Shown: piece after piece, positions 12,955 to 44,479 of the stretch
How positions within the stretch are numbered: the stretch's first letter is position 1
How the letters are laid out: each line of letters starts with the position of its first letter
Assembly (NCBI RefSeq): GCF_035084215.1
Contig: NC_090340.1
Coordinates: 2,852,001-2,916,000 of the forward strand
Reading direction: 5' to 3'
Origin: Heptranchias perlo
Taxonomy: Eukaryota
DNA length: 64,000 bases
Program-made: the position numbers and the translations under genes
Notes under the pieces: model-generated
Seen by the model: only the letters and a program-made list of their open reading frames with translations
Told to the model about the DNA's origin: nothing
Database searches by the model: none

Positions 12955-13165
12955 ATTGTAAACAATTTTACAACACCAAGTTATAGTCCAACGATTTTAT
13001 TTTTAATCCCACAAGCTTTCGGGGACTTTCCCCTTCCTCAGGCGGAGGAAGGGGAAAGTCCCCGAAAGCTTGTGGGATTAAAAATAAAATCGTTGGACTA
13101 TAACTTGGTGTTGTAAAATTGTTTACAATTGTTAACCCCAGTCCATCACCGGCATCTCCACATCA
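12955..13165. mobile_element. Penelope-like inverted terminal-repeat insertion 1 with hammerhead ribozyme motif
   Basis: Perfect 85-bp inverted repeat (12955-13039 / 13045-13129), 5-nt loop, tail ...ccccagtccatcaccggcatctccacatca. TSD gtattgac(c/g)tat at 12945-12956 and 13167-13178. Minus strand reads CTGAGGA-A-GGGGA-AAG-TCCCC-GAAA-GCTT. Confidence 0.85.
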
Positions 13166-13210
13166 CGTATTGACGTATGGTATTGTTGATTATTATCTAT
13201 ATTTAAACTA

Positions 13211-13444
13211 TTGTAAGGAGTCGCACAACACCCGGTTATAGTCCAACAGCTTTATTTGAAATCACAAGCTTTCGGAGCTTTGGTCTTTCGTCAGGGATAT
13301 TTATGCTCACCTATTTTCCAATTCGGAGCTGTGAAGGTGACATTGGCTGACGAAGGAGCAAAGCTCCGAAAGCTTGTGATAACCTGGTGTTGTGCGACTC
13401 CTTACATTTGTCCACCCCAGTCCATCACCGTCATCTCCACATCA
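13211..13444. mobile_element. Penelope-like inverted terminal-repeat insertion 2 carrying a captured C1 exon fragment
   Basis: TSD tatttaaacta at 13200-13210 and 13445-13455. Inverted arms, with CTGACGA-A-GGAGC-AAA-GCTCC-GAAA-GCTT in the right arm and the same catca tail. Spacer 13293-13349 copies 12294-12351. Confidence 0.85.
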
Positions 13445-13616
13445 TATTTAAACTAATAAGGACCTTGTGAAACTTTGACACGAACATTTTGTTTCTTGTA
13501 AATATAATTTCCAATACATAATGAGGTAATTTTTCAGAAGAGAGTGAGAAATGTCATGATGTATTTTTAAAAAAGCATCGAGAGGAGGTTATCGTTGGAA
13601 AATCGTTTTATCCCTC

Positions 13617-13803
13617 GGGGGTTAGATCTTCATTATGTGCGATGATATAAAACGGGTGTTAGCGAATCGGCAGCCCGTTTTACATCTACCTCGATTTTAT
13701 TCATATTGACTTCAATGGAAATAAATTCCGGAGAGATGTAAAACAGACCGCCAATTCGCTACTATTCGTTTTACCCTAAGGCACAAAGTCAAGATCTATC
13801 CCC
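13617..13803. mobile_element. Palindromic MITE-like element
   Basis: Ends ggggttagatctt and aagatctatcccc; imperfect symmetry along its length around a central attgacttcaat. A related half copy lies at about 14861-14949. Confidence 0.65.
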
Positions 13804-13855
13804 AGTCTCTTCTTCAATCAGGAAATGAATGGAATTACATCTCAATTCACAATCC

Positions 13856-14860
13856 TCAGGGATCTGTGCTGGGTCCGCTGTTATTTGTTATTTATATTAA
13901 TGATTTGGATGAGAATTTAGGAGGCATGGTTAGTAAGTTTGCAGATGACACCAAGATTGGTGGCATTGTGGACAGTGAAGAAGGTTATCTGGGATTGCAA
14001 CGGGATCTTGATCAATGGGGCCAGTGGGCCGATGAATGGCAGATGGAGTTTAATTTAGATAAATGTGAGGTGATGCATTTTGGTAGATCGAATCGGGCCA
14101 GGACCTACTCCGTTAATGGTAGGGCGTTGGGGAGAGTTATAGAACAAAGAGATCTAGGAGTACAGATTCATAGCTCCTTGAAAGTGGAGTCACAGGTGGA
14201 TAGGGTGATGAAGAAGGCATTCGGCATGCTTGGTTTCATTGGTCAGAACATTGAATGCAGGAGTTGGGATGTCTTGTTGAAGTTGTACAGGGCATTGGTG
14301 AGGCCACACTTGGAGTACTGTGTACAGTTCTGGTCACCCTATTATAGAAAGGATATTATTAAACTAGAAAGAGTGCAGAAAAGATTTACTAGGATGCTAC
14401 CGGGACTTGATGGTTTGACTTACAGGGAGAGGTTAGACAGACTGGGACTTTTTTCCCTGGAGAGTAGGAGGTTAAGGGGTGATCTTATAGAAGTCTATAA
14501 AATAATGAGGGGCATAGATAAGGTCGATAGTCAAAATCTTTTCCCAAAGGTAGGGGAGTCTATATCGAGGGGGCATAGATTTAAGGTGAGAGGGGAGAGA
14601 TACAAAAGGGTCCAGAGGGGCAATTTTTTCACTCAAAGGATGGTGAGTGTCTGGAACGAGCTGTCAGAGGCAGTAGTAGAGGCGGGTACAATTTTGTCTT
14701 TTAAAAAGCATTTGGACAGTTACATGGGTAAGATGGGTATAGAGGGATATGGGCCAAGTGCAGGCAATTGGGACTAGCTTAGTGGTATAAACTGGGCGAC
14801 ATGGACATGTTGGGCCGAAGGGCCTGTTTCCATGTTGTAACTTCTATGATTCTATGATTC
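13856..14860 (+). mobile_element. CR1 LINE, 5'-truncated, open RT C-terminal ORF
   Basis: 303-aa ORF with KFADDTK; ctatgattct tail. Sits in the V-C1 intron, antisense to gene A. Confidence 0.93.
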
Positions 14861-15155
14861 TATAACTTTGGCGATAGTGCAAAACGGGCGATATGGGATC
14901 GGCTGCTTGTTATATATCTCGTCCGATCGTCTTTTCCATTGACTTCAATCATCAGCATACAATACGACACAGATAAATATTTACAATTATAATGTAAAGA
15001 ATTGAATGATTCAATATGATTGCTATTGAACCCATTGAAAAGCATAAAAGAAAACTTGCAAGCGGCCCAAACAAAATCATGTGAACATCTTGTCAAAAAT
15101 AATTCGCCACCGAACAATTTGTGGAACAATTATTTCAGCTAAACAATCCACTTAC

Positions 15156-15476
15156 CGTGGATAACAAGCTTTGACCCAGTTCCATTTGCAATCTGACCAT
15201 CCAGATGCTGCACTCCGCAGTAATAAACTCCAGAGTCCCCGGCGGTGACATTCAGGAACCGAAGAGAGGCCTCGTCTTTCTTTAAAGGAAGACATCGTAT
15301 TCTGCTGTCCAAACCTGACTGCAGAAACTCAGTTTCGCCGAGTTTCCACCAGTAAACATTTACATCGGAATTATCTGGAAAAACAGGGAACGCACAATAT
15401 AAAGTGATGTTTCCACCTGCGATCCTTTTGGCACGTTCAGGGGCTTGGGACACTCTGATCTGAATATCTGCAACAG
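15156..15476 (-). CDS. Gene A: V-set Ig domain exon, germline-joined VJ type (SIRP/NKp30-like)
   Basis: Acceptor tttctttctcacag| and donor G|gtaagt; 321 nt, phase 1/1. Translation (x)VADIQIRVSQAPERAKRIAGGNITLYCAFPVFPDNSDVNVYWWKLGETEF...DSGVYYCGVQHLDGQIANGTGSKLVIH has the B-strand Cys, C-strand Trp, DxGxYxC and a J-like GxG(S)xLxV motif in one exon. Confidence 0.92.
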
Positions 15477-17449
15477 CTGTGAGAAAGAAATGCAAACAAT
15501 GAATAAATATACCGTACGGCGCCAGAGGGGGAGAAGAGGAGGTCGAGAGTGCGAGATGGGAGGGCGAAAGAGAGGATTTGAATATATACCTGCATAAATA
15601 ATGCAGAGAAGCTTTATATGTCGAAAAACGGTGCCCAAAAACATTTTCAACCGTGGCAATTGACAATTCACTGAGAAGAAGTATTGGTTGTTTGGAAATA
15701 TTACTCGGAATCTATCCTCCAAGTTAAGTTCGTGCGTTAACTGCCTCACTTCTGGTGAAAGTTAACCAACGGCGCGGCAACCTGTCAGCCGCAACTCACA
15801 TGGTCAGTTAATTTGAATAATTATTCATCTCTGGCTGCACAGCTTTGGCCTTGCGTAGGGAGCGAACCTAATTGTCGATGAGAAGAAGGTTAAATTTAAA
15901 AAGATCTTCACACTTAAGGTTGAGTGGCCTCATATGGGCACACATATTGTTTCCGCGGTCATAAATATTTCAAATGCATTTAAAATATTTGTCATACTTT
16001 GCCAAGGCTGTGGGAGGGGAAGTGCCAGCGAAATCGAAACCAAATGTGTAGGCATGAAACAGATCACATGGACAAGTAATAGAAGAATACATCGCCAAAC
16101 CACCTGGGTGATGGCAGGTAAAATAGTCTTGGGGCTGTAGAGCGTGAGTCCAAGGAGAGATATCTCTTTATTCTTTCAGGGAACCCTTCCTATGGAACAT
16201 GGGTGCACTTTTCCTTGCAGTAGCCGATGACCAGGTTTAATAATGTCCGTACTACCCGCACTACCTGCGAATAGGTGCGTAGAACTCTAAGAAATGATCA
16301 AGTAGCAAATAGTATGACATGTTGGACGGAGAGCCCAGTACTGTATAACACAAAGTTTTACCTGTTTACCTTTTGCACAACTACTGTTTACCCATACCAA
16401 TACCTCACACAAGCTTATAGCTCCTGCCTTGTACCTCCTGCATATCCAAATCTGATCAGGGCTCACATTCAAGACACAGCAAACAATTGGAAGCCTTGAC
16501 ACATTCATATCTTCCAAATGCATTGCACCTCAAGTCACTGTAAACCGACCTAGCCTCATGATGTGTAGTCATGTACTGAGACCAGGCTGCCCTGTACATT
16601 CTGAGGTTTTGACTATTCTCCTTCAACCTCTAGCATCTAGTGACTACCTTTCTCCTTATCCGGCTAAGCTTTCCTGTTTAATGGTTGGTCTGCACCAGAC
16701 ATATAAATAATAGTTTTTAAATTCTTAAAGTTAACATTTGTTAACGAAAAACATGATATCCGTCACTTTTACATCCTTGTCCCTTTATATGCTGGAACAC
16801 AGGATCCCATTCCTAAATAAAAGTTAAAAGATACACGAAGACAGCGGTGTGATTTTCACCTAGGCCTTACTTTTGGACATCATGGAAAATATGTGCAACT
16901 TTTAATTCCACATTCGCACCTCCTTTTCCTGCAATGTTAATACACAGCTATTATCCGGGTGCTTTCTCATATCTCAGAACAAAGTGAGCCGTAGACCTGA
17001 ACCAATGGGTTACCTTCTGCTGCTTTACTCCCTCCTCCGTGTGTAAAGTTATTTAACATCGATTGAACATCGTCTAAGTCTATCGAAGTTAAGGTCAGCA
17101 ACGTAATGGAGTTGCAAAACAAGTATGAAACAAATCTCATCACTCTAGCTGATTATTAAAGAATCAATATGTGGTATCTTTTTCCTGTTAATATGCCATA
17201 GTTTTCTTTGAATACTTATAAAATAGCTTTATCTTCTCTTTCGTAACTTTGTAATTTGATTAAAAGTGACGCTTGCAAGATTGGCACAAGTTCCTGTGAG
17301 TAAGTTGTACTGTAACAATTTAGGTTAGGTTTGCATCAATCACACGTTGTTACTAAATACGCTATGAGTACATTGTGGCAGCATTTAGTGAGTTGCTATC
17401 ATTTTATTAATCACGGCACAACAACAGAGATAGCTCTCAATTAGATGCG

Positions 17450-18330
17450 CCTAGCACATTATGAAATGACCAAAAGTAGTCCGAAGGAGAACAATGGTCT
17501 GCCGGCTGGAAAGAAGTTAAGGGAGGTGACTCAAAAGCAGTGTCAAAGAGGCAAATGCTGAGGGGGCTGTTAAAATAAGGAGATTGAAAACAGTGCAGCA
17601 AGGGTTAGCAAGAAATCGCCAGGATGCAGAGACATTGTGAATGTTTTGTTGCAGATTTTCGTACGGATAGAATGGGAGATGAACATCAGATCAGAATATT
17701 AAGAGAAAAATCGATGACGGGAAATAGGGTCAGGGAACGTTTCTGAAGTGGGATTGACATTCTATACGAGATTTAGTGATGTTGACTCGTATTGGTTGTT
17801 AGGTGATGAGGCATTTGAAGTTGATGGGAGTAAGATGATGAGTGTGCGCATATATAGTACGACATTTGGATGAGCTCAAGTTTGTACAGGGTGGAGCTGG
17901 GCGGCTAGTAAAAATAAAATTGACAAAACTGAACTTTGAGGTGATAGAGGCATGGGCGGGGGACTCAATTTTCAAAATAAGTGATATGGTGACACGGGTC
18001 AAACATGTTACAGAGGTGGATGAAGGTTGTGTTGGTGATCAACTCGGTATGTGTTTCAAGTTTAACTAAGGGTCGAACCGGACACTAAGATGCAAACCGT
18101 CGGGTTCCGTCTGAGTGAGCAGCTGGGGAGGCACAGGTTTTCTGATGGGAGCTGAACAGATGGTTTTCGACTTCTAAAGTTGAGCTGAAGAAAGCTTTGC
18201 GACATTCAGGACTTGATATCGTCCAAGCCATTGGGCAACTCTGCAATAGGCAGGGAATCAAGGATAGTTGCTGATAGGTGCGGTTGCATATCGTTGCCCG
18301 TTGAAAACTAACCCCTGTATAAGGTCTTAT
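17450..18330 (-). mobile_element. Probable decayed L2-like LINE
   Basis: Purine-rich plus strand with fragmentary ORFs; weak resemblance only. Confidence 0.3.
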
Positions 18331-19149
18331 GCGTTGAGGAGCACTATAAGGACAGGTAATACAAGGGGTCGGGGTGGGGGAGGGGTGGATAGGAATACAA
18401 TTTTATGGCACACGAGAGGAGAATGCATGAACATGAGAGAATAAGCCACCGTAGAAGATAAACTGAGTGTCTTGCATAACCTAGGTATATAAACTAATAA
18501 AACAGGATATGAACTGGCTAACCTGCCTAATAACATTGTAGACTGAGGAAATTCAGACTGGTGCATTAAGCGTTCTTGCGTTATTACCACCGATGATAAT
18601 TTAAAGGCTTCAGTATGTCCGTATTCAATTCCTTTATCTACACTTTTAACATATTTAAAGTAAGGACTCAATTGTAAAAGTATTTGTAAATGTACCACTG
18701 CGATTTTATATGAGCAGGGCTGGCAGGTGAAGACCAGGACAATTTGTAGTCTATGATTTAGGAAAGCTAATTAAAGAATCCTGACGAAGACCATTCACCT
18801 GACATGAGCTTGAGATGGAAATATTCCCTCCATCAGCAACAGAGGGAGAGAATACTGCACAAAGTAACAGCATTTTATAGTTGCTACTATGAATTTCAAC
18901 GAAGACCAAATGATTCAAGTCGCGTGTTATTCTGATATGAATGCATTTTCAAATCGTTTAACAACCAGCATGTCTAAATGCTTGGATGCAAAGCGTTCCC
19001 CTTAAAATGGTTAGTCACAAAGCAAGAGAATGAAAAACAACATATTTTGCAAATGCGCACTGTACTTCTTCATTAGAATTTGGACAGGTAATACATTTGG
19101 TGTAGATTTACAGATGTAAATATCACAAGTATAACCATAACATGGGTTG

Positions 19150-19900: not shown

Positions 19901-20292
19901 GGGAAAGAGGGGCACAGACGGTAGATCTCTATGGGATCTACAGTATTTTCACTGAGAAAAGGTCAATGGTGAATTTCCTGACTACAATAAAATATATCAT
20001 GGATCAACATTTTTGAGCCAGTTTCGTTTCATAGTTTGTTACCCGGGTATCTGAGCTGGCAGCAATATTGGCCCAAACGTTCAAGAGCTGACAGAATACC
20101 GTACCTTCTTTAAAACAATGCAAACGCTAATTTCTGTTTGAACTTGCTATCGTAAACTTATTTTTTGTTAAGTATTCACCAACATATTTTTATATTTTCA
20201 CTGTTTTCAGTTAGAAGGAATGCAGCATTGAAGGATACAATCACATTGGTGCTTTGAGGGGGATTCCGCGAGGAATGAACACATTTTTAAAA

Positions 20293-21335
20293 ATTCGTTC
20301 ATGGGATGTGGGCGTCGCTGGCGAGGCCGGCATTTATTGCCCATCCATAATTGCCCTTGAGAAGGTGGTGGTGAGTGGCCTTCTTGAACCGTTGCAGTCC
20401 GTGTGGTGACGGTTCTCCCACAGTGCTGTTAGGAAGGGAGTTCCAGGATTTTGACCCAGCGACGATGAAGGAACGGCGATAGATTTCCAAGTCGGGATGG
20501 CGTGCGACTTGGACGGGAACATGCAGGTGGTGTTGTTCCCATGTGCCTGCTGCTCGTGTCTTTCTAGGTGGTAGAGGTCGCGGGTTTGGGAGGTGCTGTC
20601 GAAGAAGCCTTGGCGAGTTGCTGCAGTGCATCCTGTGGATGGTACACACTGCAGCCACTGTGCGCCGGTGGTGAAGGGAGTGAATGTTTAGGGTGGTGGA
20701 TGGGGTGCCAATCAAGCGGGCTGCTTTATCTTGGATGGTGTCGAGCTTCTTGAGTGTTGTTGGAGCTGCACTCATCCAAGCAAGTGGAGAGTATTCCATC
20801 ACACTCCTGACTTGTGCCTTGTAGATGGTGGAAAGGCTATGGGGAGTCAGGAGGTGAGTCACTCGCCGCAGAATACCCAGCCTCTGACCTGCTCTCGTAG
20901 CCACAGTATTTATATGGCTGGTCCAGTTAAGTTTCTGGTCAATGGTGACCCCCAGGATGTTGATGGTGGGGGATTCGGCGATCGAAATGCCGTTGAATGT
21001 CAAGGGGAGGTGGTTAGACTCTCTCTTGTTGAAGATGGTCATTGCCTGGCACTTATCTGGCGCGAATGTAACTTGCCACTTATCAGCCCAAGCCTGGATG
21101 TTGTCCAGGTCTTGCTGCATGCGGGCTCGGACTGATTCATTATTTGAGGGGTTGCGAATGATACTGAACACTGTGCAATCATCAGCGAACATCCCCATTT
21201 CTGAACTTATGATGGAGCGAAGTTCATTGATGAAGCAGTTGAAGATGGTTGGGCCTCGGACACTGCCCTGAGGAACACCTGCAGCAATGTCCTGGGGCTG
21301 AGATGATTGTCCTCCAACAACCACTACCATCTTCT
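20293..21335 (-). mobile_element. L2/CR1-group LINE, second family, 5'-truncated
   Basis: 343-aa ORF GVPQGSV.GP...MFADDCTV...YKAQVRSVMEY; 3' end ...gcccacatcccatgaacgaat. Confidence 0.9.
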
Positions 21336-22521
21336 TTAATCAAAACATTAGACTGACTTCAGAAAAAAGGAACGAAATAGGAGACAATAAGAAACATTTA
21401 ATGACAGTAACGATGCTCGAAAATTCAAAGAAGAGAATTGATAATTCAGCTCATAAACAGTCCTTCTTGCAGAAGCTTAAACGCTTCGATCACAAGCTCA
21501 TTTTAAAGATTTTGGGCTTTACTACTTTGCCTGGCAGAATATTTATCCAGTCATCAGTAAATAAATTCTTGCTATTATTTATCTTAAATCTACGTTGCAC
21601 TGATTTATGTTTTCCCCACTCGGGACCTACTTTTATGTCCTACTTCAAAGTAAACAAGATGGATCTCATCTAATGTTTAATATTGGGAAATTTATTTTCT
21701 CAGTGAGGTATGTCATAACCTGGATAACCTGGTTTCTTAATTTTTATATTAGTGTTGCAGTTCATCTATGGGCTGTGGTTAAATTGAGCACAGTTTCGTC
21801 TAAGGTGGCGACTAAGTCTGAACACGGTCCTCCAAGGGTAAACAGAACCATTCATTGGCAACACGGTGCATCACCTCTGAACACATGTACTCCATGGTTC
21901 AGAATATGTAGCTCAGCATTTCTTGCCTTTTAGAATCGTTTTCCCATTTTGTTTCGGCTTTTATTCTTAGGGCCCTTTCTAATCTGCCATGTGCAAATTC
22001 AGTTCCATTTTTATATACATATGGGTCACGTTTATGTGATCTATGTGCAACATTTTTCAATGATCACTTATATACAATCTTCATTTTTTATCATTTGATC
22101 AATCTGGCTATGCAGTTCAACAAATTTACATTCACTGTATATTGCTCATCTCGTTTTAGATTCGTTAACCGATTTGCACAGCTTAATTTTGAGATTCTGA
22201 TCAATTTTGTAGTTTAGAAACAATTCAACGGGTCAAACACCTTTCTGCACTCAAAAACTTATCCCAAATTAAATATAAATCTTTTCAGGACATTTAAAAA
22301 TGTTTTTCTAGTCCCATATTTGAACCTGGATTCTTTAGTTAACTTATAAATATTTTAGGTTGAACATTGGCGAAACATTTTTGAAAGTTCAATTACTGTG
22401 TCTCATATAAAGTTCCGCCACTTTGTGTATCTGTCATGCCCTCGAAGATATCAAGTGAATTTTTAGTTTCTAAATCCATGTTGGATATTTCCTGTTAAGT
22501 TATTGTTGCACAAATACTAAT

Positions 22522-27090: not shown

Positions 27091-27109
27091 CTATTTGCCT
27101 TATTACCAT

Positions 27110-29420
27110 TTTTTCCTAACCCAGATTTCCAGGACAATTGCTGAATCGAGACAGCTTTGGAAGATTATAGCTAAAACATCTCTAATTTCCTAATTTATTT
27201 CGTTTAAAAGCCTAGAGTGCAAACGATCAGGCCCTGAGGATTTGTCAGTCTTTAGTGCCATTATTTTTATCTAATACTGTTTGTTCATGTTAACTTTATT
27301 GAGTTCAATACCTTGATTCATTATTAGTTTCCAAGGAAAGTCACGTATATTATCCTGTTCATCTTCTGTTAAGACTGACACTAAGTAATTATTCAACAAT
27401 CTGCCATTTTCTTATTTTTAATTGCGATGTTACCCACGACTGTTTTTAAAGAGACCTCATTATTCTTGACAACCCTTTTTCTTCGAATATAATTGTAAAA
27501 ACTATTGGTGTTAATCTTGATATCCCACACAAGTCTTATTGATAATGCCATCACTCAAATCAATTTCTCCTAATCTCCACTTTGCTTCTTTTGCCAGTTA
27601 TCTTAAATTGGTAACCTTCAGTTATCGAACCACCTGCCATTGGAAAAAAAATCCTCATATACATTATCAAGTCCCCTCCTAATTTTGAACATGTCTATTG
27701 GATCTCCCTTTAACTTTCTCTGATCTTCGGTAATTAATCCCAGATTCACTTTTTTCCACCACATAAATGAAGTTCCTTATACCTGGTATCATTCTGGTAA
27801 GTCTCCTTTTCATCCGCTCCAAGACTTTGACATCCTTCCTAAATAGTGGTTCGCAGAATTGGACACAATTTTGTAGCTGCGGTCAAACCAGCGATTTTTA
27901 AGGGTTTGGCCAAATTTCCTTGCTTTTGTACTCTATGCCTCTATTTATAAAGCCTAAGATCCCGTATGTTTTTTTTAACAGCTTGATCAACTTGGCCTGC
28001 CGCTTCAATGATATGTGCATTTCCACCCCATGGTTTCTGTTCCTACACCCCCTTTAAAATTGTACCATTTCGTTTAGTTTTCCTCTCCCCATTCTCCCTT
28101 CCAAAATGTATCACTTAACGCTTATCTGCATTAAATTTCATCTGCCATGCATCTGCGCATTTCACCAGTCTTTCTATACCCTCCTGAAATCCGATATTAT
28201 ACTCCTCACTGTTTACTACACTTCTGAGTTTCGTGTCATCTGCAAATTATGAAATTATGCCCTGTATACACAAGTCAGGTCATTAATACTTTTTTAATAT
28301 TCGTTCATGGGATATGGGCGTCGCTGGCGAGGCTGGCATTTATTGCCCATCCCTAATTGCCCTTGAGAAGGTGGTGGTGATCCGCCTTCTTGAACCGCTG
28401 CAGTCCGTGTGGTGAAGGTTCCCCCACTGTGCTGTTGGGAAGGGAGTTCCAGGATTTTGACCCAGTGACGATGAAGGAACGGCGATATATTTCCAAGTCG
28501 GGATGGTATGTGACTTGGAGGGGAACGTGAAGGTGGTGATGTTCCCATGAACCTGCTGCTCTTGTCCGTCTAGGCGGTAGAGGTCACGGGTTTGGAAGCT
28601 GTTGTCGAAGAAGCCTTGGCGAGTTGCTGCAGTGTATCCTCTGGATGATACACACTGCAGCCACAGTGCGCCAGTGGTGATGGGAGTGAATGTTTAGGGT
28701 GGTGGATGGGGTGCCAATCGAGCGGGCTGTTTTATCCTGGATGGTGTCGAGCTTCTTGAGTGTTGTTGGAGCTGCACTCATCCAGGCAAGTGGAGATTAT
28801 TCCATCACAGTCCTGACTTGTGCCTTGCAGATGGTGGAAAGGCTTCGGGGAGTCCGGAGGTGAGTCACTCGCCGCAGAATACACAGGCTCTGACCTGCTC
28901 TTGTAGCCACAGTATTTATATTGCTGGTCCAGTTAATTTTCTGGTCAATGATGACACCCAGGATGTTGATGGTGGGGGATTCGGCGATTGTAATGCCGTT
29001 GAATGTCAAGGGGAAGTGGTTAGACTCTCTCTTGTTGGAGATGGTCATTGCCTGGCACTTGTCTGGTGCGAATGTTACTTGCCACTTATCAGCCCAAGCC
29101 TGGGTGTTGTCCAGGTCTTGCTGCATGCGGGCTCGGACTGCTTCATAATTTGAGGGGTTGTTAATCAATATATATCAAAAAGAGCAGTGTCCCAATACCG
29201 ACCTGTGGTGGGGGTCGGGGGGCACACCACTGTATACGTTCCTCCAAACTGAAAAACAACAGTTCATAACTGCTCCCTGATCTCTATCTCATAGCCAATG
29301 TCATATCCACATTCATTACGTGGGCTTCAATTTTGATAACAAGTATGCTATGTGGCACCCTATCGAACGTATTTTTTACGTCCATATATACAACAACCAC
29401 ACTACCGTGATCAACCCTCC
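27110..29420 (-). mobile_element. Decayed CR1 interrupted by a second-family LINE (about 28297-29160)
   Basis: CR1 RT sequence breaks at ...gtcaggtcattaata and resumes at tatatcaaaa. The insert encodes DKWQVTFAPDKCQ...KAQVRTVME, similar to 20293-21335. Confidence 0.85.
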
Positions 29421-33559: not shown

Positions 33560-36500
33560 ATGTCTAAGGAACCTGGTTGAATATTTTGAGGAGGTAACTA
33601 ACAGGTAGAAAGTAGCAATTCACCCGATCCAAGTGGGATGCATCCTCGGTTCCCGAGGGAAGTAAGGATGGAACTTACGGAGGCTCTGGCCACAATATTT
33701 CAGTCCTCCTTCGACATGGGGGTGGTGCTGGAGGACTGGAGGGATGCAAATGTTACACCCTGTTCAAAAAAGGGGAGAGGGATAAACCCAGCAATTACAG
33801 TCCAGTCAGCCTAACGTCGGTGGTGGGGAAGCTTTTAGAGCCAATAACCCTGGACAAAATTTATTGACACTTAAAAAGGTATGGGCTAATAAATGGGCAC
33901 GGAATTGTTAAAGGAAAATCGTGTTTGATTGGCTTGTTTGAGTTACTTAGAATTACACAGGATGCACACAACAGAAACAGGTTATTTGGCCCAACAGGTC
34001 GATGCCGGTGTTTATGCTCCACATGAACATCCTACTTCCCCACTTCATCTCACCCTATCAGCATATGCTTCTATTCCTTTCTCCCTCATATGTTTACCAT
34101 CTTCCACTTAAAATAATCTATGCTAGTCGGCTGAACTGCTCCATGTGATAGCGAGTTCCACATTTTAACACTCTCAGGGTAAAGAAGTTTCTCCTGAATT
34201 CCTTATTGGAATTATTAGTATTTATCTTATATTTATGGACCCTAGTTCTGGTCTCTCCCGCAATTGGAAATATCTTCTCTATGTCTACCCTATTAAACAC
34301 TTTCATAATCTTAAAGACCTCTATCAGTTCATCCCTCAGTATTCTCTTCCATAGAGACAAGAGCCCCAGCCTGCTCAATCTTTCTTGATAGCTATAACCT
34401 CTCAGTTCTGGTATGATCCTAGTAAATCTTGTTTGCAACTACTCCTGTGCCTCCGCTATATCCTGTTTTTTTAATATGGAGACCAGAATTGTTCGCATTA
34501 CTCCAACTGTGGTCTAACCAAGGTTCAATACAAGTTTAACATAACTTCTCTGCTTTTCAATTCTATCTCTGTAGAAATGAACCCCAGTACTTGGTTTGAT
34601 TTTTTATGGCCGCATTAACCTGCATCTCTACTTTTAGTGATTTATGTATCTGTACCCCCGGTCCTTCTGCTCATCTACCCCATTTAGATTCTTATTATCC
34701 AAGCAGTATGTGGCCCCCTTAGTCTTCCTAAACAAAAGGAATACATCATACTATCTATATTGAAATTCATTTTGCCAATTACACGTTCATTCTGCAAGTT
34801 TATTAATGTATTTCTGCATTCCTACTCGGTATTAACTATACTCCGCAATTTCCTGTTGTCGTTCTTTGATAAAGGAACGAAGAGGGTTGATGAGAGTGGT
34901 GCAGTTGTTATTCTGAATATGGACTTGATAGGCTTGTTAGCAAAATTAAACCCCACGACGTTAAAGGGACAGTGGCAGCGTGGATACAAGTTTGGGCAAG
35001 GGACAGAAAACAGAGAGTAGTGGTGAACGGTTATCTTTCAGACTGGAGGGAAGAATACAGTAATGTTGTCTAGGGGTCAGTATTACGACTACTGCTCGTT
35101 TTGATATATATTAATGAACTGGACTTAGGTATGGAGGGAATAATTTCAAAGCCGCAGATGAAACGAAACTCAGAAATGTAATAAGCAATGTGGAAGGTAG
35201 CAATAGAGTTTAGGAGGACCTAGACAGAGTGGTGAAATGTTCAGACACATGGCAGATTAAATTTGACTCAAAGAAGTGTGAAGTGATATATTTTAGTAGG
35301 AGGAATGCGAAGAGACAAAATAAACTAAAAGGTGCAATTTTAAAGGGGGTGCAGGAACAGAGGTGTATGGTCAAAAGTATTTCAAGGTGGCAGGACAAGT
35401 TGAGAAGGCTGTTAAAAAGCAGATGGGATCCTAGGCTTTATTAATAGAGGCTTATAATACAAAAGCAAGGAAGTTATGATAGAAACATAGAAACATAGAA
35501 AGTAGGAGCAGGAGTTGACCATTCATCCCTTCGATCCTGCTTCGCCATTCAATATGATCATGGCTGATCCTCTATCTAATTACGATATTCTCGCTCTCTC
35601 CCCATACCCCTTGATGCCTTTTGTGTCTGGAAATCTATCTAGCTCCTTTTTAAATATATTCAGTGACTTGGACTCCACAGCCTTCTGTGGTAGAGAATTC
35701 CACAGGTTCACCACCCTCTGAGTGAATAAATTTCTTCTAATCTCAGTCCTCAATGTCCTATCCGTATCCTGAGAATGTGACCCCTCGTTCTGGACCCCAG
35801 AGCCAGGGGAAACAACCTCCCAGCACCCAGTCTGTCTAGCCCTGTCAGAATCTTATATGTTTCAATGAGATCCCCTCTCATTCTTCTAAACTCGAGTGAA
35901 TACAGGCCAAGTCGACCCAATCTCTCCTCATATGACAGTCCTGCCATCCCAGGGAGCAAGTTATTATCTTAATGGCAAGAAACTGGAAAGTACTGCAGTA
36001 CAGAGGGATCTGGGGGTCCTAGTGCAAGAAAATCAAAAAGTTAGTATGCAGGTGCAGCAGGTGATCAAGAAGGCCAACGGAATATTGGCTTTTATTGCTA
36101 GGGGGATAGAATATAAAAACAGGGATGTATTGCTGCAGTTATATATTGTAAACAATTTTACAACACCAAGTTATAGTCCAGCAATTTTATTTTCAATTCA
36201 CAAGCTTTCGGAGGCTTCCTCCTTCGTCAGGTGAACGATGTTCACCTGTTCACATCGCAGTTATATAAGGTATTGGTGAGACCGCACCTGGAATACTGCA
36301 TACAGTTTTGGTCTCCATACTTAAGAAAAGACATACTTGCTCTCGAGGCAGTACAAAGAAGGTTCACTCGGTTAATCCCGGGGATGAGGGGGCGGACATA
36401 TGAGGAGAGGTTGAGTAGATTGGGACTCTACTCATTGGAGTTCAGAAGAATGAGAGGCGATCTTATTGAAACATATAAGATTGCGAAGGGGCTTGATCGG

Positions 36501-39500: not shown

Positions 39501-40480
39501 AGGCAGATTCAATCTTGGCTTTAAAAGGGGAATTGGATAGGTATTTAAAGAAAAAGAATTGCAGGGCTACGGGGATACGGCGGTGAAGAGGGATTCGATG
39601 GGTTGCTCTAGCAGAGAGCCTGCACGGACTTGATGGGCCGAATGGCCTTCTTCCGTGCTGTAACCATTCTATGATTCTATAATTGTGTGATTTCATTTAT
39701 ATTGGCCCTCTTCATTCATCCTTCCAAAATGCATCACTTTACACTTCTTTGCGTTAAATTTTATCTGCTATGTGTTTGCCCATTTCAACAGTTCGTCTAA
39801 GTCCTCCTGCAGTCTGCTACTATCCTCCTGAATGCATTGCCGAGTTTTGAACTGTCTGCAAACTTTGAAATGATGCTTTTCATACCGAAGTCGAGGTCAG
39901 TAATATACATCAACAAGAGCAGTGTGTCCTCATACCGCTGGAGGATACCATTATATTTTCCTCCAGTCTAAAAAACAAACGTTCAACAGTACTCTCTTTT
40001 CTGTTTCGTATCCACAGTGCCACTGTATCATTAATCCCATTGGATTGAATTTTGCTAAATGTCTATTATGTGCAAATTTAGAATCTCAGTTATGCCCTCT
40101 GCCTCCACAAAGAGATTTCCTCATAGATCCTTAATAGGTCGCACCCTTCCTTCGACTATCCTATTACTCTGTATATGTTTGTAAATGATTTTAGTATTTC
40201 CCTTTATATTACCTGATAACCTTTTCTCATACATTCTCTTTGGCTCTCATTTCATTTTCAGTTCTCCTCTGCACGTTCTGTATTCTGTTTGATTCTCTAT
40301 TGTATTATGAACCTAACATTTATCAGATTCCGCCCTTTTCTGTTTCATTTTAATATCAATATTTTTAGTCATCCAGTGACCTCTAGCTTTGCATGCCCTT
40401 CTATCCCCACCCCTCATAGGAATGAATTTCTTCTTTATCTGTACTGTGTCCTGCTTGAATTCCACCCATTGTTCGTTTAA
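33560..40480. mobile_element. Nest of CR1 fragments in both orientations
   Basis: Approximate pieces: + 33560-33945 resuming 34860-35478; - 33950-34850; - 35478-35953; + 35954-36850; - 36855-37560; - 37683-38610; - 38760-39020 resuming 39700-40480; + 39030-39680. Each has CR1 RT or 3' motifs in the ORF track. Confidence 0.85.
36146..36256 (-). mobile_element. Penelope-like insertion 3 (one full arm, intact minimal hammerhead) inside a CR1 ORF
   Basis: TSD gcagttatata at 36135-36145 and 36257-36267, interrupting CR1 ...LLQLY|KVLVRPHLEY. Minus strand reads ttcac-CTGACGA-A-GGAGG-AAG-CCTCC-GAAA-GCTT-gtgaa. The right arm is reduced to gttcacctg...cacatc. Confidence 0.85.
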
Positions 40481-41679
40481 TGTTTTAGTAAATGACAACA
40501 AGTTTCTTTGTTCAAACATGAGATTTATTGCCACAAGAAATAAATGGAAGGACTGTGGATTGTGATGATCTCCTAAGTAGGTCTGCAGATAAGTCTTTGC
40601 GTAATGTTGAACAATGGGAATCATTTACTGTACGAGGGATTTTATTTTCCCAGATACCCATTTGCCTCATCCTGAGCTACCTAGTTTTCGGGTGGAGGTT
40701 GTGGCGGGGCGGGGGTGGGGGGTGGGGCGGGCGGAGGGCGTGGGAGTGAAATGTTGTGGATATTATAAATGATTGTTTATTTATACGAGATGTTAAACCA
40801 AGCAATATGCGAATTCAGGTCAGAAAATGAAAGGTGTTGAAGATCCATGGTCAGAGTCGCATGTCTGTCATAAAAGCAATTGAGTGTTAGGATGCAGTGC
40901 AAAACTAAAAGTACGATCGCAATCTTATACAATATCACGCTCCGGTTTCATCCAGAAAACTTTGCCCAATTTGCGTCCCTCGTATGATTAGGAATATCAA
41001 GGCTCTGATAAAGATTGAAAGAAGGAGCGCTCGATTGATGCGAAGTTTAAGGAGCCTGAGTCATCAGAAAACTCTTAGAGAGTTGACTTTTTATCATGTT
41101 TTTAAATTTTGAAGGAAATAGATTATTTTCAAGCGGTAGATTATTTAAATTAGATAGGCAGCAGGGAGCTCGGGATATCAATATAAACTGCGAAGCATAA
41201 GCTTAGAGTAAATGCCTGGTCGGTCTTCTTTTGCAGAGTTGTGGATCTGTGGAACAAGTAACCAGCGCTGGCGCTGAGTGTAATTTCGCTACAGGCGTTC
41301 AAATAGGAGCAGGAAGAGTTCCTGCAAGTGAAAGATATCTCCAGTGGTAGAGTTGGGTGGATGGGATAGTGATATTGGTTATTGTGATCATGTGGCTTTA
41401 ACTTGATTGTCTGCAGAGGTCAGTGAGGAATGTTCCAGATTTATTTTATTTAAAAATGGAGGAAAGTTATTTTTCTCTTTTTTAGCTCTCCCAAGATATT
41501 GCTTGGTCGGGGCTGGGGGAGGAGAGCTGGGTTAGATTATGGACAGAGAAAGCTCGGTTGAGCGACTGGTCATTTCGTGGCCTTTCTTGTAAGCTAGGAT
41601 CAGATTTCTGGATCTTACATCCGAGAGATTGAGTAGATTCAGATACTCCCGACTTTGAGACACAGATAAGGAAGTGCTA

Positions 41680-43050
41680 CTGTTAGCCTGACATCAGTCG
41701 CCGGGAAAATGCTGGAATCTATTATTAAGGAAGTGGTAATAGGGCACTTAGAAAATCATAATATGATTGGGCAGAGTCAACATGGTTTTATGAAAGGGAA
41801 ATCGTGTTTGACAAATCTATCAGAGTTTTTTGAGGATGTAACCAGCAGGGTAGATAAAGGGGAACCAGTCAATGTTGTATATTTGGATTTTCAAAAGGTT
41901 ATTAAGGCGATAAAGTGCCACACAAATGGTTGTTACACGAGTTAATGGATCATGGGTTTGAGGTAATGTATTACCGTGGATAGAGGATTGGTTAATGGAC
42001 AGAAAACAGAGATTCGGAATAAACGGGTCATTCTCAGGTTGGCAGGCTGTAACTAGTGAGGTTGCTGCAAGGATCAGTGCTTGGGCCTCAGCTATTTACA
42101 ATTTATATTAATGACTTAGATGAAGGGCCCGAGTGTAATGTATCCAAATTTACTGACGATATATAGCTAAGTGGGAAAGTATGCTGTGAGGACAAAAAGT
42201 GTCTGCAAAGAAATATAGACAGGTTAAGTAAGTGGGCAAGAAGGTGGCCGATGGAGTATAATGTGGGGAAATGTGAGGTTGTTCACATTGGTTGGGAGAA
42301 CAGAAAAACAGAATGTTTTTAAATGGTAAGAAACTATTCAATGTAGTTGAGAGAGATTTACAGAGATATGTGCTTTTACACGAAACACAGAAAGTTAACA
42401 TGCAGGTACTGCAAGCAAATAGGAAGGCAAATGGTATTTATTACAAAGGGGTTGGAGTACAAGAGTATGGAAGCCTTGCTACAAATGTACAGGGCTTTGA
42501 TGAGACCACACCTAGAGTACTGTGTACAATTTTTGTCTCATTGCCTAAGGAAGGATATACTTGTCTTAGAGGTAGGGCAACGAAAAACCACGAGATTTAT
42601 TCCTGGGATGAAAGTGTTGTCCTATGAGGCGAGATTGAGTAAAATTGGCCTATATTCTCTGAAGTTTCGAAGAATGAGAGGTGATCTCATTGAAACGTAT
42701 AACATTCTTAGATGGCTTGACAGGGTAGATACTGAGAGGCTGTTTCCTCCGGCTGGAGAGCCGAGAACTCAGGGGCATAGTCTCAGGATAAGGGGTTGAA
42801 CATTTAGGGCTGAGATGAGGAGGAATTTCTTCACTCAGAGGGTTGTGAATCTTTAGAATTCACTATCCCAGAGGGCTGTGGATGCTCAGTTATCATGGTT
42901 GAAATCGATGGATTTTTGGACTCTGAAGGAATCAAGAGATATGGGGAGCGGACGGGAAAGTGCATTTGAGGTCGAAGATCTTATTGAATGACGGAGCAGT
43001 CTCGAGGGGCCATATGGACTACTCCTCTTCCTATTTCTTATGTTCTTATT
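41680..43050 (+). mobile_element. CR1 LINE RT/3' fragment
   Basis: QHGFMKGKSCLTNL, RPHLEYCVQF; tail atttcttatgttctta. Confidence 0.9.
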
Positions 43051-43645
43051 TTCTAAGAAGATTGGATATTTTATAGGGATAGGAACTAAAACGTGTAGAA
43101 TAAGAAAAGTACATTTGGGCAGTCCAGCAGAGCCTTTACAATAGGTTTTGTACAACTAGTTATATGATGGAGTCTGTATCATTGGCGAATCATTACAGGT
43201 ATATCATCCAACAAGGTTAACGTGTATGAAATCTTTTGCTGTTCAAAGAATAAAGTGAAGAACAATTACAAGGGATTAATTTAAGGTAATGACCTTTATT
43301 AAATATTCACTGAAATTTACGTTGCTCTCATGGTAATTGAATTGCCCCACTATCACACGAGAGACAATATTCCATAAAGCATTCTGTCCGAATCGAGAAT
43401 TTTCATTGCATTTATTTAGACGCCTCCAGCAGAAGTCGCTCGATACCGACAAGTCGCGCAAACTCTTCCACACAGTGGATCGTGAAGTAATTGTGCCCCG
43501 CCCAATTTTCCTTTATTTAGAGCAGCTAATTGAGCCCGTATCGAGTAAATAAACTGGTACATGCTTCGTCCATAAGATAATTGACCTGTGCAATGAAATA
43601 GGAAAGTCTCGGGCTTGTTGTCCTAACAACCTTCTCTATTAGGGG

Positions 43646-43919
43646 TTACCTCCTTCGTCAGGTGAACGAGGCGTCTAAATAAATGCAATGAAAATTCTCG
43701 ATTCGGACAGAATGCTTTATGGAATATTGTCTCTCGTGTGATAGTGGGACAATTCAATTATCATGATCAATTATCATTCAATTTTCACTTCGTTCACCTG
43801 ACGAAGGAGGTAGCCTCCGAAAACTTGTGAATTTAAAATAAAATTGCTGGACTATAACTTGGTGTTGTAAAATTGTTTACAATTGTCAACCCCAGTCCAT
43901 CACCGGCATCTCCACATCA
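43646..43919 (+). mobile_element. Penelope-like insertion 4 carrying a captured 99-bp local sequence
   Basis: TSD tctctattagggg at 43633-43645 and 43920-43932. Short inverted left arm (43646-43669) and full right arm ttcac-CTGACGA-A-GGAGG-TAG-CCTCC-GAAA-aCTT-gtgaa...catca. Spacer 43668-43766 is the reverse complement of 43328-43426. Confidence 0.87.
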
Positions 43920-44448
43920 TCTCTATTAGGGGAGCAGCGAACATCGTTAATTCATACATCTTGTTAATTCTTATATAGGGTCCCAATGTTTTATTACTTG
44001 TCGTCTTTTGAGTCAACAATTAAATGTTTTCTGGATGGGCCCAGCTAGTTGAGTACCTTTAATTCTAATAGTTTCTTTCGAATGATGATTTGCACCAATG
44101 GCTGATAAACTTTATTATCAGCATTTCTTTGAAATATATAACCATTAGGTAACAATATTCATGTACCATTGTGCATGAGATTAAACATATTCAATATTTG
44201 ATATTTAAAAAGAGTGTTTCTGTCCTTTGCATTTATTTGTTCAGAAGCCAGCAAGTGTTATCAATCTGTTTTAATGATTTCACCCCACAGATTAGCACCG
44301 ATTTATAAAATTAACTATTTAATTGTGCGTCATATGATGCAGGTAATGTATTTTCCACGATTATAAAATGCATCTTTGATCATTGTTGTTCACATAAGCC
44401 GGTTTTAATTTCCTTTCTTACCTTTAAACATTCATTCGATTGTCCTTG

Positions 44449-44479
<31 letters not shown>
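44449..44479. repeat. (AT)n microsatellite
   Basis: atatatat... run with one interruption. Confidence 0.9.

What the first reader, a model, noticed from the sequence alone, without database searches (positions are those of the whole stretch)
12955..43932. Hammerhead-armed Penelope-type insertions that capture neighbouring host DNA between their inverted arms
Seen: four TSD-flanked insertions (12955-13165, 13211-13444, 36146-36256, 43646-43919) share one plan: inverted arm, spacer, arm, ...ccacatca tail. The arms turn around at or beside the hammerhead CTGANGA motif. Two have a spacer of only 3-5 nt. In the other two the spacer is a near-exact copy of DNA lying 0.2-1 kb from that copy's own insertion site, once direct and once inverted, with 2-3 nt junction microhomology. 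Established: Penelope-like elements carry minimal hammerheads in their terminal repeats and often form inverted structures. Inference: because the cargo matches the target locus, it was picked up at or after integration (RT template jumping or polymerase-theta-type repair of the hairpin tip), not transduced from a donor site. That would be a repeatable mechanism for local micro-duplication. I cannot tell whether it has been described.
Basis: partly seen in the sequence, partly recalled or inferred. Interest (0 to 1): 0.85.

Follow-up and report, generated by a model that had tools for sequence, protein, structure and literature searches.

The report
Retroelement fold-backs that copied nearby DNA
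Four short hammerhead-bearing Penelope-type retroelement insertions sit here as fold-backs, and in two of them the joint between the arms holds a near-exact copy of DNA from 0.2-1 kb away, most likely a repair-type filler rather than a new kind of mobile element.

Summary
All four insertions have target-site duplications (8-13 bp). Three carry a 36-nt tail at one end only. The spacers of c2 and c4 are 98% copies of DNA 942 bp (direct) and 242 bp (inverted) away, with 3-, 3- and 2-nt junction microhomology.

- c3's right arm and tail are vestiges.
- c4's left arm is only about 23 nt.
- Other genomic copies turn around elsewhere, not only at the hammerhead.

The fold-back plus one-sided tail is the published Penelope-like plan, and the hammerhead fits the published minimal type with compensatory changes. 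No Penelope RT/endonuclease gene is in the window.

Best reading: the cargo is templated filler laid down when the two arm ends were joined, at integration. Later breakage of the palindrome centre cannot be excluded.

Two similar local copies in the window lie at sites without Penelope arms. This points to a repair-type process (host polymerase, or any reverse transcriptase copying DNA) rather than a Penelope-specific trick.

Comparable fillers are published for L1 and T-DNA, and host-DNA spacers for rotifer Penelope.

First-stage notes of this scan report similar captures on other DNA of this genome; I did not check them.

The parts
12955..13165 (+). c1: fold-back insertion. Left (antisense) arm 12955-13039, 5-nt loop 13040-13044, right arm 13045-13129, 36-nt tail 13130-13165. 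Exact 8-bp TSD at 12945-12952 and 13167-13174.
   Evidence: arms 98.3% over 175 nt; I3: 5 nt between arms
13210..13444 (+). c2: fold-back insertion of a second subfamily. Left arm 13210-13294, spacer 13295-13346, right arm 13347-13408 (23-nt internal deletion), tail 13409-13444. TSD 13200-13210 and 13445-13455.
   Evidence: (I10, I12)
13293..13349 (+). c2 cargo: direct copy of 12294-12351 (57 of 58 aligned columns). AGG and CTG microhomology at its two ends.
   Evidence: It is absent from other copies of the family laid on c2 (joints 13279>13347 and 13295>13349).
12294..12351 (-). Source of the c2 cargo: the last 39 nt of an Ig C1-set exon of a minus-strand gene, its GT donor, and 19 nt of the intron.
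   Evidence: C1-set, E 1.9e-12. A contig of run X5 ends at 12313, the exon end.
36145..36256 (-). c3: full antisense arm 36145-36238, a 10-nt stub of the opposite arm 36239-36248, and an 8-nt piece like the tail's end 36249-36256. TSD 36135-36145 and 36257-36267. Inserted in a CR1-like LINE reading frame.
43646..43919 (+). c4: 23-24-nt left arm 43646-43669, cargo, stutter 43767-43777, 12 nt of unclear origin 43778-43789, right arm 43790-43883, tail 43884-43919. 13-bp TSD 43633-43645 and 43920-43932.
   Evidence: (I14)
43668..43766 (-). c4 cargo: inverted copy of 43328-43426 (97 of 99). GA microhomology at the left junction. The right junction is followed by an 11-nt re-copy of the cargo's own end.
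43328..43426 (+). Source of the c4 cargo, 242 bp from the insertion.
43790..43842 (+). Best-preserved hammerhead-like motif. Helix I 5' strand, CUGACGA, extra A, helix II GGAGG/CCUCC, GAAA, AACUU (AGCUU in the other arms), helix I 3' strand GUGAAU.
   Evidence: No Rfam hit.

Best explanation
These are copies of a very abundant, short (about 130 nt), non-autonomous Penelope-like retroelement. The element consists of a minimal hammerhead followed by the region where the Penelope reverse transcriptase starts.

Each insertion was made at a staggered double nick, which gives the TSD. It ended up as a head-to-head fold-back. One arm starts at the inner start site (...ACAAT). The other starts 36 nt further on (...CCACATCA), and that extra stretch is the 'tail'.

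The fold-back could arise in two ways: both nicked target strands primed cDNA on the same RNA, or one cDNA snapped back on itself. In either case two 3' ends of identical sequence meet in the middle and cannot simply anneal. They must be joined by a microhomology-primed polymerase step.

- Usually this leaves 0-6 nt between the arms.
- In c2 and c4 a free 3' end first annealed by 2-3 nt to single-stranded DNA of the neighbouring flank and copied 55-99 nt. It then let go, and re-primed once in c4. Finally it annealed by 2-3 nt to the other arm.

The cargo is therefore a templated filler of the polymerase-theta/MMBIR type, or the same reaction done by the reverse transcriptase on a DNA template.

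**Shown:** the structures, TSDs, tail, local origin of the cargo, microhomology and stutter.

**Inferred:** the order of events, the enzyme, and that it happened at integration.
For: **Architecture**
- 3 of 3 informative left arms start at ...ACAAT without a tail; c4's 23-nt left arm starts internally and is not informative. 3 of 4 right arms end with the 36-nt tail.
- This matches the published inverted 5'-truncated copy with a 30-40-bp tail at one end (PMC8557442).
- It also matches the published in vitro result that a Penelope protein nicks and extends both strands from two start sites that bracket the tail (PMC11167929).

**Arm symmetry**
- The arms end at the same element position in c3 and c4 (TCGTTCACC) and within 1 nt in c2.
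- The four joints listed within c1 from other copies are near-symmetric.
- The middle is therefore a joint of two equal ends.

**Cargo**
- The cargo is local, 98% identical, once direct and once inverted.
- The cargo is absent from other family members.
- Microhomology is AGG and CTG in c2, and each can pair a 3' end with its next template. It is GA in c4. Chance is about 4e-4.
- c4 shows an 11-nt re-copy, which is a stutter.

**Not Penelope-specific**
- Two more local inverted copies lie at non-Penelope sites in the same 64 kb: 92 nt at 46007-46098 and 66 nt at 58054-58119. The copying activity therefore needs no Penelope element.

**DNA rather than RNA template**
- The c2 source crosses an exon-intron boundary of an immune-type receptor gene.
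- I infer that such a gene is unlikely to be transcribed in germ cells, which favours a DNA template.

**Published parallels**
- Templated fillers at Pol-theta joints map to flanks (PMC10923293).
- L1 insertions can carry templated genomic DNA (PMC11702581).
Against: - There are only two events here, with no genome-wide census.
- Nothing dates the cargo relative to the insertion. Arm-arm versus cargo-source divergence cannot be told apart: c2 3/62 vs 1/58, p 0.62; c4 0/23 vs 2/99, p 1.
- Fillers of 55-99 nt copied from 0.24-0.94 kb away are longer and more distant than the usual Pol-theta scars, which from recall are mostly under 30 nt and within about 100 bp.
- Exposing a template 0.94 kb away needs long resection or strand invasion.
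- c2's two arms differ (94-96%) and one has a 23-nt deletion. Its history is therefore more complex than one step.
- No read-level confirmation of the hairpins was possible.
Confidence: 0.55

Rival explanations
1. Post-integration repair. The element first inserted as a plain near-perfect palindrome like c1. Later the palindrome extruded as a hairpin or cruciform and was cut at its tip. The break was sealed by microhomology-mediated end joining with a templated insertion, which also stabilised the palindrome.
For: - The arms of c2 end within 1 nt of each other, and those of c4 at the same position. A break exactly at the centre would give this.
- c2's cargo differs from its source less (1/58) than its arms differ from each other (3/62). 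This is not significant.
- Local templated copies occur at non-Penelope sites too.
- Centre-break revision of palindromes is established in mouse cells (recalled, not from a call).
Against: - c1 has kept 85-nt arms with a 5-nt loop while accumulating about 1.7% arm divergence, so palindromes of this size persist here.
- First-stage notes list several perfect 79-102-bp hairpins elsewhere in this genome (unchecked).
- c4's left arm is only 23 nt. That is too short to form a palindrome prone to extrusion, unless the arm was shortened later without touching the TSD.
Confidence: 0.22
2. RNA-templated capture. The Penelope reverse transcriptase jumped from the 5' end of the element RNA onto a nascent, unspliced host transcript tethered at the locus. 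It copied 55-99 nt and jumped back.
For: - Template jumps and capture of host sequence are proposed for Penelope elements (PMC3846280).
- The c2 source lies in the same transcription unit as the insertion, and includes an exon end plus intron as pre-mRNA would.
- Either orientation of cargo can be produced, depending on which arm's cDNA jumped (inference).
Against: - The host gene is an Ig-superfamily receptor (C1-set and V-set exons). I infer it is unlikely to be transcribed in the germ line, where heritable insertions arise.
- The same kind of local copy occurs at two sites without a Penelope element.
- No transcript evidence exists for the c4 source.
Confidence: 0.15
3. Assembly artefact or chance similarity.
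For: No contig of the four runs laid spans a hairpin, so there is no independent read-level support. Penelope fold-backs are known to trouble assemblies (PMC8557442).
Against: - Every insertion is framed by a TSD of 8-13 bp.
- E-values of the cargo matches within the window are 1.7e-23 and 6.6e-48.
- The junctions fall exactly at arm ends, with microhomology.
- Contigs of X1 and X4 match 11800-12977 with no differences, and a contig of X1 matches 13144-13232 likewise.
Confidence: 0.04
4. The cargo belongs to the element (a subfamily consensus) or was transduced from a donor locus.
For: None found. 33 contigs in X1 run on into unlike sequence upstream of the c2 right arm (table 7), so longer variants or other flanks exist.
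Against: - Word depth falls about 14-fold in the bin holding the c2 spacer (81,145 against 1.1-1.27 million beside it).
- Other copies join the arms with 1-6 nt.
- The source is a coding exon end for c2.
- The source is contiguous unique DNA for c4.
Confidence: 0.02

Closest known systems
Canonical Penelope-like element insertions (Penelope/Poseidon clade): inverted 5'-truncated copy plus one-sided 30-40-bp tail; PAc in vitro system
   Same: - Fold-back of two copies of the 3' region.
- A 36-nt tail at one end only.
- TSDs.
- A hammerhead about 60-95 nt upstream of the two ends.
- Ends that fall in a predicted stem-loop.
- Papers PMC8557442 (passages) and PMC11167929 (main text).
   Different: - The copies here are only about 110-275 bp and have no ORF.
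- No Penelope RT/GIY-YIG gene is in the window.
- Two copies carry locally templated cargo at the arm-arm joint. The passages and main text I read do not mention this.
Host-DNA spacers and self-priming palindromes in Adineta vaga Penelope elements (Arkhipova et al. 2013, PMC3846280; passages)
   Same: Unique host-derived spacers inside Penelope insertions. Palindromes at the inverted junction, read as self-priming. Template jumps proposed.
   Different: - There the spacers are 0.9-1.5 kb, lie between the element body and the 3' pLTR, and their source was not traced.
- Here the cargo is 55-99 nt, lies between the inverted arms, and comes from 0.24-0.94 kb away.
Polymerase-theta end joining with templated insertions ('filler DNA'), for example at T-DNA and CRISPR breaks (PMC10923293; passages)
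   Same: Microhomology of 2-3 nt at each switch. Template in the flank of the break, in either orientation. Iterative priming and release (the stutter in c4).
   Different: The fillers here are longer and from further away than I recall as typical. Enzyme dependence is untested. A reverse transcriptase could do the same on DNA.
L1 insertions with 5' inversion (twin priming), foldbacks and templated genomic DNA insertions (PMC11702581; passages)
   Same: Both target ends are used. There is microhomology at inner junctions. Genomic DNA is occasionally copied into the insertion. c4's 23-nt left arm looks primed internally on 4 nt of homology, as in twin priming.
   Different: In twin priming the two pieces come from adjacent, different parts of the RNA. 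Here both arms copy the same part, which gives a true palindrome.
Non-LTR retrozymes (tandem hammerhead repeats giving circRNAs; preprint 10.64898/2026.07.22.740005, abstract and passages)
   Same: Short non-autonomous hammerhead-bearing derivatives of the Penelope pLTR region. Reported in one cartilaginous fish among other vertebrates.
   Different: Retrozymes are defined by tandem arrays. The four copies here are dispersed and inverted, not tandem.

Membership tests
Penelope-like element (insertion architecture) | Inverted 5'-truncated copy next to the direct copy, forming an inverted repeat | tested here: met
   4 of 4 copies have an inverted arm: 85, 85, 94 and about 23 nt.
Penelope-like element (insertion architecture) | 30-40-bp tail present at one end only | tested here: met
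   A 36-nt tail sits at the right end of 3 of 4 copies and at no left end. c3 keeps only 8 nt resembling the tail's end.
Penelope-like element (insertion architecture) | Short target-site duplication | tested here: met
   TSDs of 8, 10-11, 10-11 and 13 bp.
Penelope-like element | ORF with telomerase-like RT and GIY-YIG endonuclease | tested here: not met
   0 of 22 ORFs of 150 aa or more hit GIY-YIG. RVT_1 hits (6) go with LINE-type APE endonuclease hits (2). I read one of the RTs and it looks LINE-like. These copies are therefore non-autonomous, and the parent was not found.
Minimal hammerhead of Penelope-like elements (Cervera and de la Pena 2014) | CUGANGA and GAAA cores in the right order and spacing | tested here: met
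   5 of 6 arms have both cores. c1's right arm starts inside the CUGANGA box. There is no Rfam hammerhead hit, even at E up to 10, in the two regions tested.
Minimal hammerhead of Penelope-like elements | [quoted passage not shown] | tested here: met
   An extra A is present in 6 of 6 arms. G-C at the first helix II pair in 5 of 6. Criteria are from PMC4209133.
Minimal hammerhead of Penelope-like elements | Palindromic positions 15.2-16.2 (dimeric helix III) | tested here: met
   AGCU follows GAA in 5 of 6 arms. c4 has AACU.
Minimal hammerhead of Penelope-like elements | Helices I and II supported by covariation | tested here: met
   83% of 66 cells are paired. 4 of 11 pairs have changes on both sides. 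0 of 500 shuffles reach the score. Slid controls give 20-53% paired. Caveat: only 6 rows from 4 insertions, so they are not independent.
Minimal hammerhead of Penelope-like elements | Self-cleavage | not testable with these tools
   Needs an in vitro cleavage assay.
Polymerase-theta-type templated insertion | Microhomology at each template switch | tested here: met
   AGG, CTG and GA at 3 of 3 readable junctions. The fourth is a stutter. Chance is about 4e-4.
Polymerase-theta-type templated insertion | Template near the break, in cis or trans, either orientation | tested here: met
   Sources lie 242 bp (inverted) and 942 bp (direct) away. These distances and lengths exceed what I recall as typical.
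Polymerase-theta-type templated insertion | Dependence on Pol theta | not testable with these tools
   Needs genetics or biochemistry.
Non-LTR retrozyme | Tandem head-to-tail repeats of the hammerhead unit | tested here: not met
   No direct tandem of the unit is in the window. c1 and c2 are separate insertions 45 bp apart, each with its own TSD.
L1-type twin priming | The inverted piece copies a different, adjacent part of the RNA | tested here: not met
   Both arms copy the same segment.

The most novel reading that the evidence does not exclude
Penelope-type integration may obligatorily end with the joining of two identical cDNA 3' ends. If so, every one of the very many fold-back copies in this genome would be a fossil of one germ-line end-joining event. 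A measurable fraction would carry fillers copied from the resected flank, 0.1-1 kb away. That would make the family two things:
- A natural, genome-wide recorder of germ-line microhomology-mediated repair: resection length, template choice and strand.
- A recurrent source of local micro-duplication that can move exon ends and splice signals into introns. An example is the copied C1-exon donor now sitting in the upstream intron of its own gene.
Probability: 0.3. Interest if true: 0.65.

Novelty: new variant of a known kind. Interest (0 to 1): 0.45.

Why it matters
The way Penelope-like elements finish integration is still open. [quoted passage not shown]

Fold-back joints that sometimes hold locally templated filler are direct sequence evidence about that last step. 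They suggest a microhomology-primed polymerase reaction on nearby single-stranded DNA.

If the pattern is general, three things follow:
- It gives a cheap computational read-out of germ-line alternative end joining in a vertebrate.
- It explains some short local duplications.
- It shows how pieces of exons and splice sites can be scattered within a gene.

With two events the claim is modest. The element architecture itself is ordinary for this class.

Tried and rejected
**Rfam.** No hammerhead family matched. There was no gathering-score match in the whole window and none at E up to 10 in 12900-13500 and 43600-43950. The microRNA-like hits there only reflect the long hairpins. I judged the hammerhead by the published minimal-motif criteria instead.

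**More copies of the element.**
- Two metagenome scans gave nothing: 0 hits for the tail and 1 chance hit in a bacterial gene for a 20-nt arm pattern (locus L001, not used).
No further regions of this genome could be fetched, and no census was possible.

**Reads.**
- The one read-laying run returned only short Logan contigs. They break inside the repeats.
- It gave family-level information: huge summed word depth over the element (0.4-1.5 million against 9-27 in unique flanks), about 17,000 contig records per DNA run, and short inter-arm letters in other copies.
- It gave no spanning support and no empty site. The one run of a second organism (X9) held only repeat pieces.

**Autonomous parent.** None among 22 ORFs of 150 aa or more. 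I did not classify each RVT_1 hit by phylogeny.

**Dating the capture.** Comparing arm-arm with cargo-source divergence had no power.

**Template strand.** Each cargo can be explained by extension of either arm. The orientation therefore does not discriminate RNA from DNA template, or which flank strand was used.

**Readings rejected.**
- Transduction from a donor, and cargo being part of the consensus.
- Retrozyme membership, since there are no tandem units.
- Classical twin priming, since the arms copy the same segment.

**Papers.** Three sets may bear on the comparison and I did not see them:
- Figures S1-S2 of PMC11167929 (genomic ends and tails).
- The supplementary hammerhead families of PMC4209133.
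- The supplementary insertion catalogues of PMC11702581.

Some statements come from recall and from no call:
- The original twin-priming paper.
- The Pol-theta snap-back and trans-extension biochemistry.
- Typical filler sizes.
- Centre-break palindrome revision.
- A viroid hammerhead with an extra core nucleotide.

Full report
**What is there.**

I read the four regions and compared each with the whole window by blastn. All four are insertions framed by target-site duplications.
- c1 (12955-13165) is a near-perfect palindrome. It has two 85-nt arms, 98.3% alike over the 175-nt self-alignment, separated by 5 nt and followed by a 36-nt tail. It is flanked by an exact 8-bp duplication.
- c2 (13210-13444) belongs to a second subfamily. 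It has an 85-nt left arm, a 52-nt spacer, a right arm with a 23-nt internal deletion, the tail, and a 10-11-bp duplication.
- c3 (36145-36256) has a full 94-nt antisense arm. Only 10 nt of the opposite arm and 8 nt that resemble the tail's end follow. The duplication is 10-11 bp.
- c4 (43646-43919) has a left arm of only 23-24 nt, then 99 nt of cargo, an 11-nt re-copy of the cargo's end, and 12 nt of unclear origin. A full right arm, the tail and a 13-bp duplication follow.

The 30-nt tail pattern occurs 3 times in the window at up to 3 mismatches, always at the right end of c1, c2 and c4. An alignment of all arms shows that the left arms of c1, c2 and c3 begin exactly at ...ACAAT. The right arms run 36 nt further, to ...CCACATCA.

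**The cargo.**

The c2 spacer region 13293-13349 is a direct copy of 12294-12351 (57 of 58 aligned columns), 942 bp away. The c4 region 43668-43766 is an inverted copy of 43328-43426 (97 of 99), 242 bp away. Each has this single match in the 64-kb window.

If a single match could fall anywhere in the window, the chance that both lie this close is about 2e-4.

Lining up insertion, arm continuation and source at each junction gives shared AGG and CTG at the two ends of the c2 cargo and GA at the left end of the c4 cargo. Three junctions with at least 3, 3 and 2 nt have a chance of about 4e-4. The right end of the c4 cargo is followed by a re-copy of its own last 11 nt.

The c2 source is the last 39 nt of an immunoglobulin C1-set exon of a minus-strand gene, its GT donor, and 19 nt of intron (C1-set E 1.9e-12). 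A V-set reading frame lies upstream on the same strand. The copy now sits in the upstream intron of the same gene.

**Is the cargo part of the element?** No.

When contigs of four public runs were laid on 11800-14000, summed word depth was 9-27 in the unique flanks and 0.4-1.5 million over the arms and tail. It dropped about 14-fold in the bin that holds the c2 spacer.

Contigs from other copies of the family join the arms across the spacer with only 1-6 other letters. Examples are 13279 to 13347 with CAC and 13295 to 13349 with TGAG.

The same table lists four joints inside c1: 12992/13093, 12992/13097, 12998/13089 and 13011/13065. They come from copies with shorter but nearly symmetric arms. 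The turn-around at the hammerhead is therefore not a general rule, while arm symmetry seems to be.

All runs were short Logan contigs, and none spans a hairpin. A contig of X1 and one of X4 match 11800-12977, and one of X1 matches 13144-13232, all without differences. The assembly of the hairpins is therefore not independently confirmed.

**What kind of element.**

The plan is the published one for Penelope-like elements: an inverted 5'-truncated copy, a 30-40-bp tail at one end, and a target duplication (PMC8557442, passages; PMC3846280, passages).

The in vitro study of the Anolis element shows three relevant things (PMC11167929, main text):
- The protein nicks and extends both target strands.
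- It starts reverse transcription at two internal sites in a stem-loop about 85-92 nt downstream of the hammerhead cut site (26 bp into the ORF), at 111-118 bp into the ORF.
- The tail is the stretch between the two start sites.

The geometry here is the same. The hammerhead-like motif is followed after about 57 and 93 nt by the two ends. In the predicted fold of the c4 unit the inner end lies in an apical hairpin. The fold also reproduces helices I and II of the hammerhead (z -2.79, 0 of 200 shuffles as stable).

Rfam finds no hammerhead. The motif nevertheless meets the published traits of the minimal Penelope hammerhead (PMC4209133, passages):
- CUGANGA and GAAA cores in 5 of 6 arms.
- A G-C first pair of helix II in 5 of 6.
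- A palindromic AGCU in 5 of 6.

On the named structure, 83% of 66 cells pair and 4 of 11 pairs change on both sides. No shuffle of 500 reaches the score. The rows are only six, from four insertions.

No GIY-YIG domain was found in any of the 22 ORFs of 150 aa or more. The RVT_1 hits go with LINE-type endonuclease hits. These are non-autonomous copies, and the parent is elsewhere.

**How it most likely works.**

Two routes give a head-to-head palindrome with one tail:
- cDNA synthesis from both nicked strands on the same RNA, each from one of the two start sites.
- Snap-back of one cDNA on itself, the self-priming reading of PMC3846280.

Both predict equal arm ends. This is what c2 (within 1 nt), c3 and c4 (same position, TCGTTCACC) show, as do the four joints listed within c1 from other copies.

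Use of both strands accounts more simply for c4. There the left target end, ending in GGGG, appears to have primed inside helix II on 4 nt of homology and copied only the last 23 nt. It also accounts more simply for c3. I cannot decide between the routes.

In either case two 3' ends of the same sequence meet in the middle and must be joined by a microhomology-primed step.

For c2 the observed microhomologies fit a simple path:
1. The 3' end ...CGTCAG of the right-hand cDNA pairs with CTG at 12349-12351 on the plus strand of the left flank.
2. It copies back to 12294.
3. Its new end ...CCT pairs with the ...AGG end of the left arm.

For c4, the left arm's 3' end ...GA folds back on its own strand at 43427-43428 and copies 99 nt. 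It releases, re-primes once, and is then joined.

This is the behaviour described for polymerase-theta joints with templated fillers (PMC10923293, passages). L1 insertions made in cultured cells also sometimes contain templated genomic DNA (PMC11702581, passages).

**Evidence that it is not a Penelope speciality.**

I made a self-comparison of the window at 90% identity or more. Apart from the arms themselves, a 29-nt match between two repeat copies (267-295 / 1719-1747) and a 30-nt palindrome (44449-44478), it lists four local duplications within 5 kb: the two cargos and two others.
- 46007-46098 is a 92-nt insertion inside a CR1-like LINE copy that its relatives lack. It is an inverted copy of 45458-45520, about 0.5 kb away.
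- 58054-58119 is an inverted copy (62 of 66) of 57900-57964, 90 nt away, next to a LINE fragment.

Neither has Penelope arms. Local templated copying therefore happens here without Penelope. Even so, two of four events fall exactly on the centres of four fold-backs, which makes those centres strongly favoured sites.

**Rivals.**

*Later breakage of the palindrome centre, followed by repair, would give the same product.*
- Against: c1 has kept its palindrome while its arms diverged by 1.7%.
- Against: c4's 23-nt arm is too short to be prone to extrusion.
- The divergence comparison has no power.

*A jump of the reverse transcriptase onto nascent host RNA is possible.*
- It is disfavoured by the non-Penelope events.
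- It is also disfavoured by my inference that an immune-receptor gene is unlikely to be transcribed in germ cells.

*Artefact and donor transduction are unlikely,* for the reasons given above.

**Known or new.**

The architecture and the hammerhead are known. Host-DNA spacers in Penelope elements are known, but there they are long, placed differently, and of untraced origin. Templated fillers are known for T-DNA, CRISPR breaks and L1.

In those searches and the passages I read, I found no report that the cargo between Penelope fold-back arms comes from the target's own neighbourhood. I could not see supplements, and subscription papers are not covered. I file it as a new variant of a known kind.

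**Earlier notes of this scan.**

First-stage notes on this window describe the same two cargos and the 46-kb inverted copy. I checked those.

Notes on other pieces of the same genome report:
- Several perfect 79-102-bp Penelope hairpins.
- A 3.2-kb palindrome.
- A dual-start-site reading.
- Two further possible captures, one of about 300 bp of a neighbouring intron.

I could not check these. They are leads suggesting that the pattern recurs.

**Limits.**

There are two events and one window. There was no census, no spanning reads, no empty sites and no parent element. The organism was given only as a coded name.

Noticed in passing
window 46007-46098 (source 45458-45520): A 92-nt insertion inside a CR1-like LINE 3' copy, absent from three related copies. 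It is an inverted copy of DNA about 0.5 kb upstream and carries about 30 nt that the source lacks. It has no Penelope arms. It looks like a templated insertion at an ordinary break.
   Followed up: partly
window 58054-58119 (source 57900-57964): An inverted copy (62 of 66) of a LINE segment lying 90 nt upstream, placed just past the point where the LINE alignment stops. It may be a snap-back copy at a LINE junction.
   Followed up: partly
window 12314-12613 (-) and 15139-15666 (-): An Ig C1-set exon (Pfam E 1.9e-12) and a V-set reading frame lie on the minus strand. A contig of the possibly-RNA run X5 ends exactly at the exon's donor (12313) and runs on into unlike sequence, as a spliced transcript would.
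   Followed up: partly
window 13293-13349: The c2 cargo places a second copy of the C1 exon's last 39 nt and its GT donor in the upstream intron of the same gene, in the same orientation. It is a potential decoy splice donor.
   Followed up: no
window 12955-13444: c1 and c2, from two subfamilies, inserted 45 bp apart in the same orientation. Three of the four TSDs contain ATT, the motif reported as preferred by the Anolis Penelope endonuclease. This is weak evidence of target preference.
   Followed up: no
window 13618-13803: A degenerate palindrome with 92-nt arms, 72% complementary, 2 nt apart. It has no hammerhead motif that I could see. It is an unidentified older fold-back or MITE-like element.
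   Followed up: no
window 36046-36350: c3 interrupts a CR1-like LINE reading frame. The TSD splits a conserved ...LLQLY / KVLVRPHLEYC... stretch.
   Followed up: no
window 20284-21337, 28277-29165, 52957-54023: Three copies of a young LINE family (91-92.5% alike). One has a 455-aa open RT frame (53021-54388, minus strand).
   Followed up: partly
window 12910-13500: The element family is extremely abundant in the DNA runs. Summed word depth is 0.4-1.5 million, against about 15 in the flanks. It is also strongly represented in the run guessed to be RNA. Most other copies read C where c1 has T at 13133.
   Followed up: no
window 44449-44478: A 30-nt near-perfect palindrome (93%).
   Followed up: no
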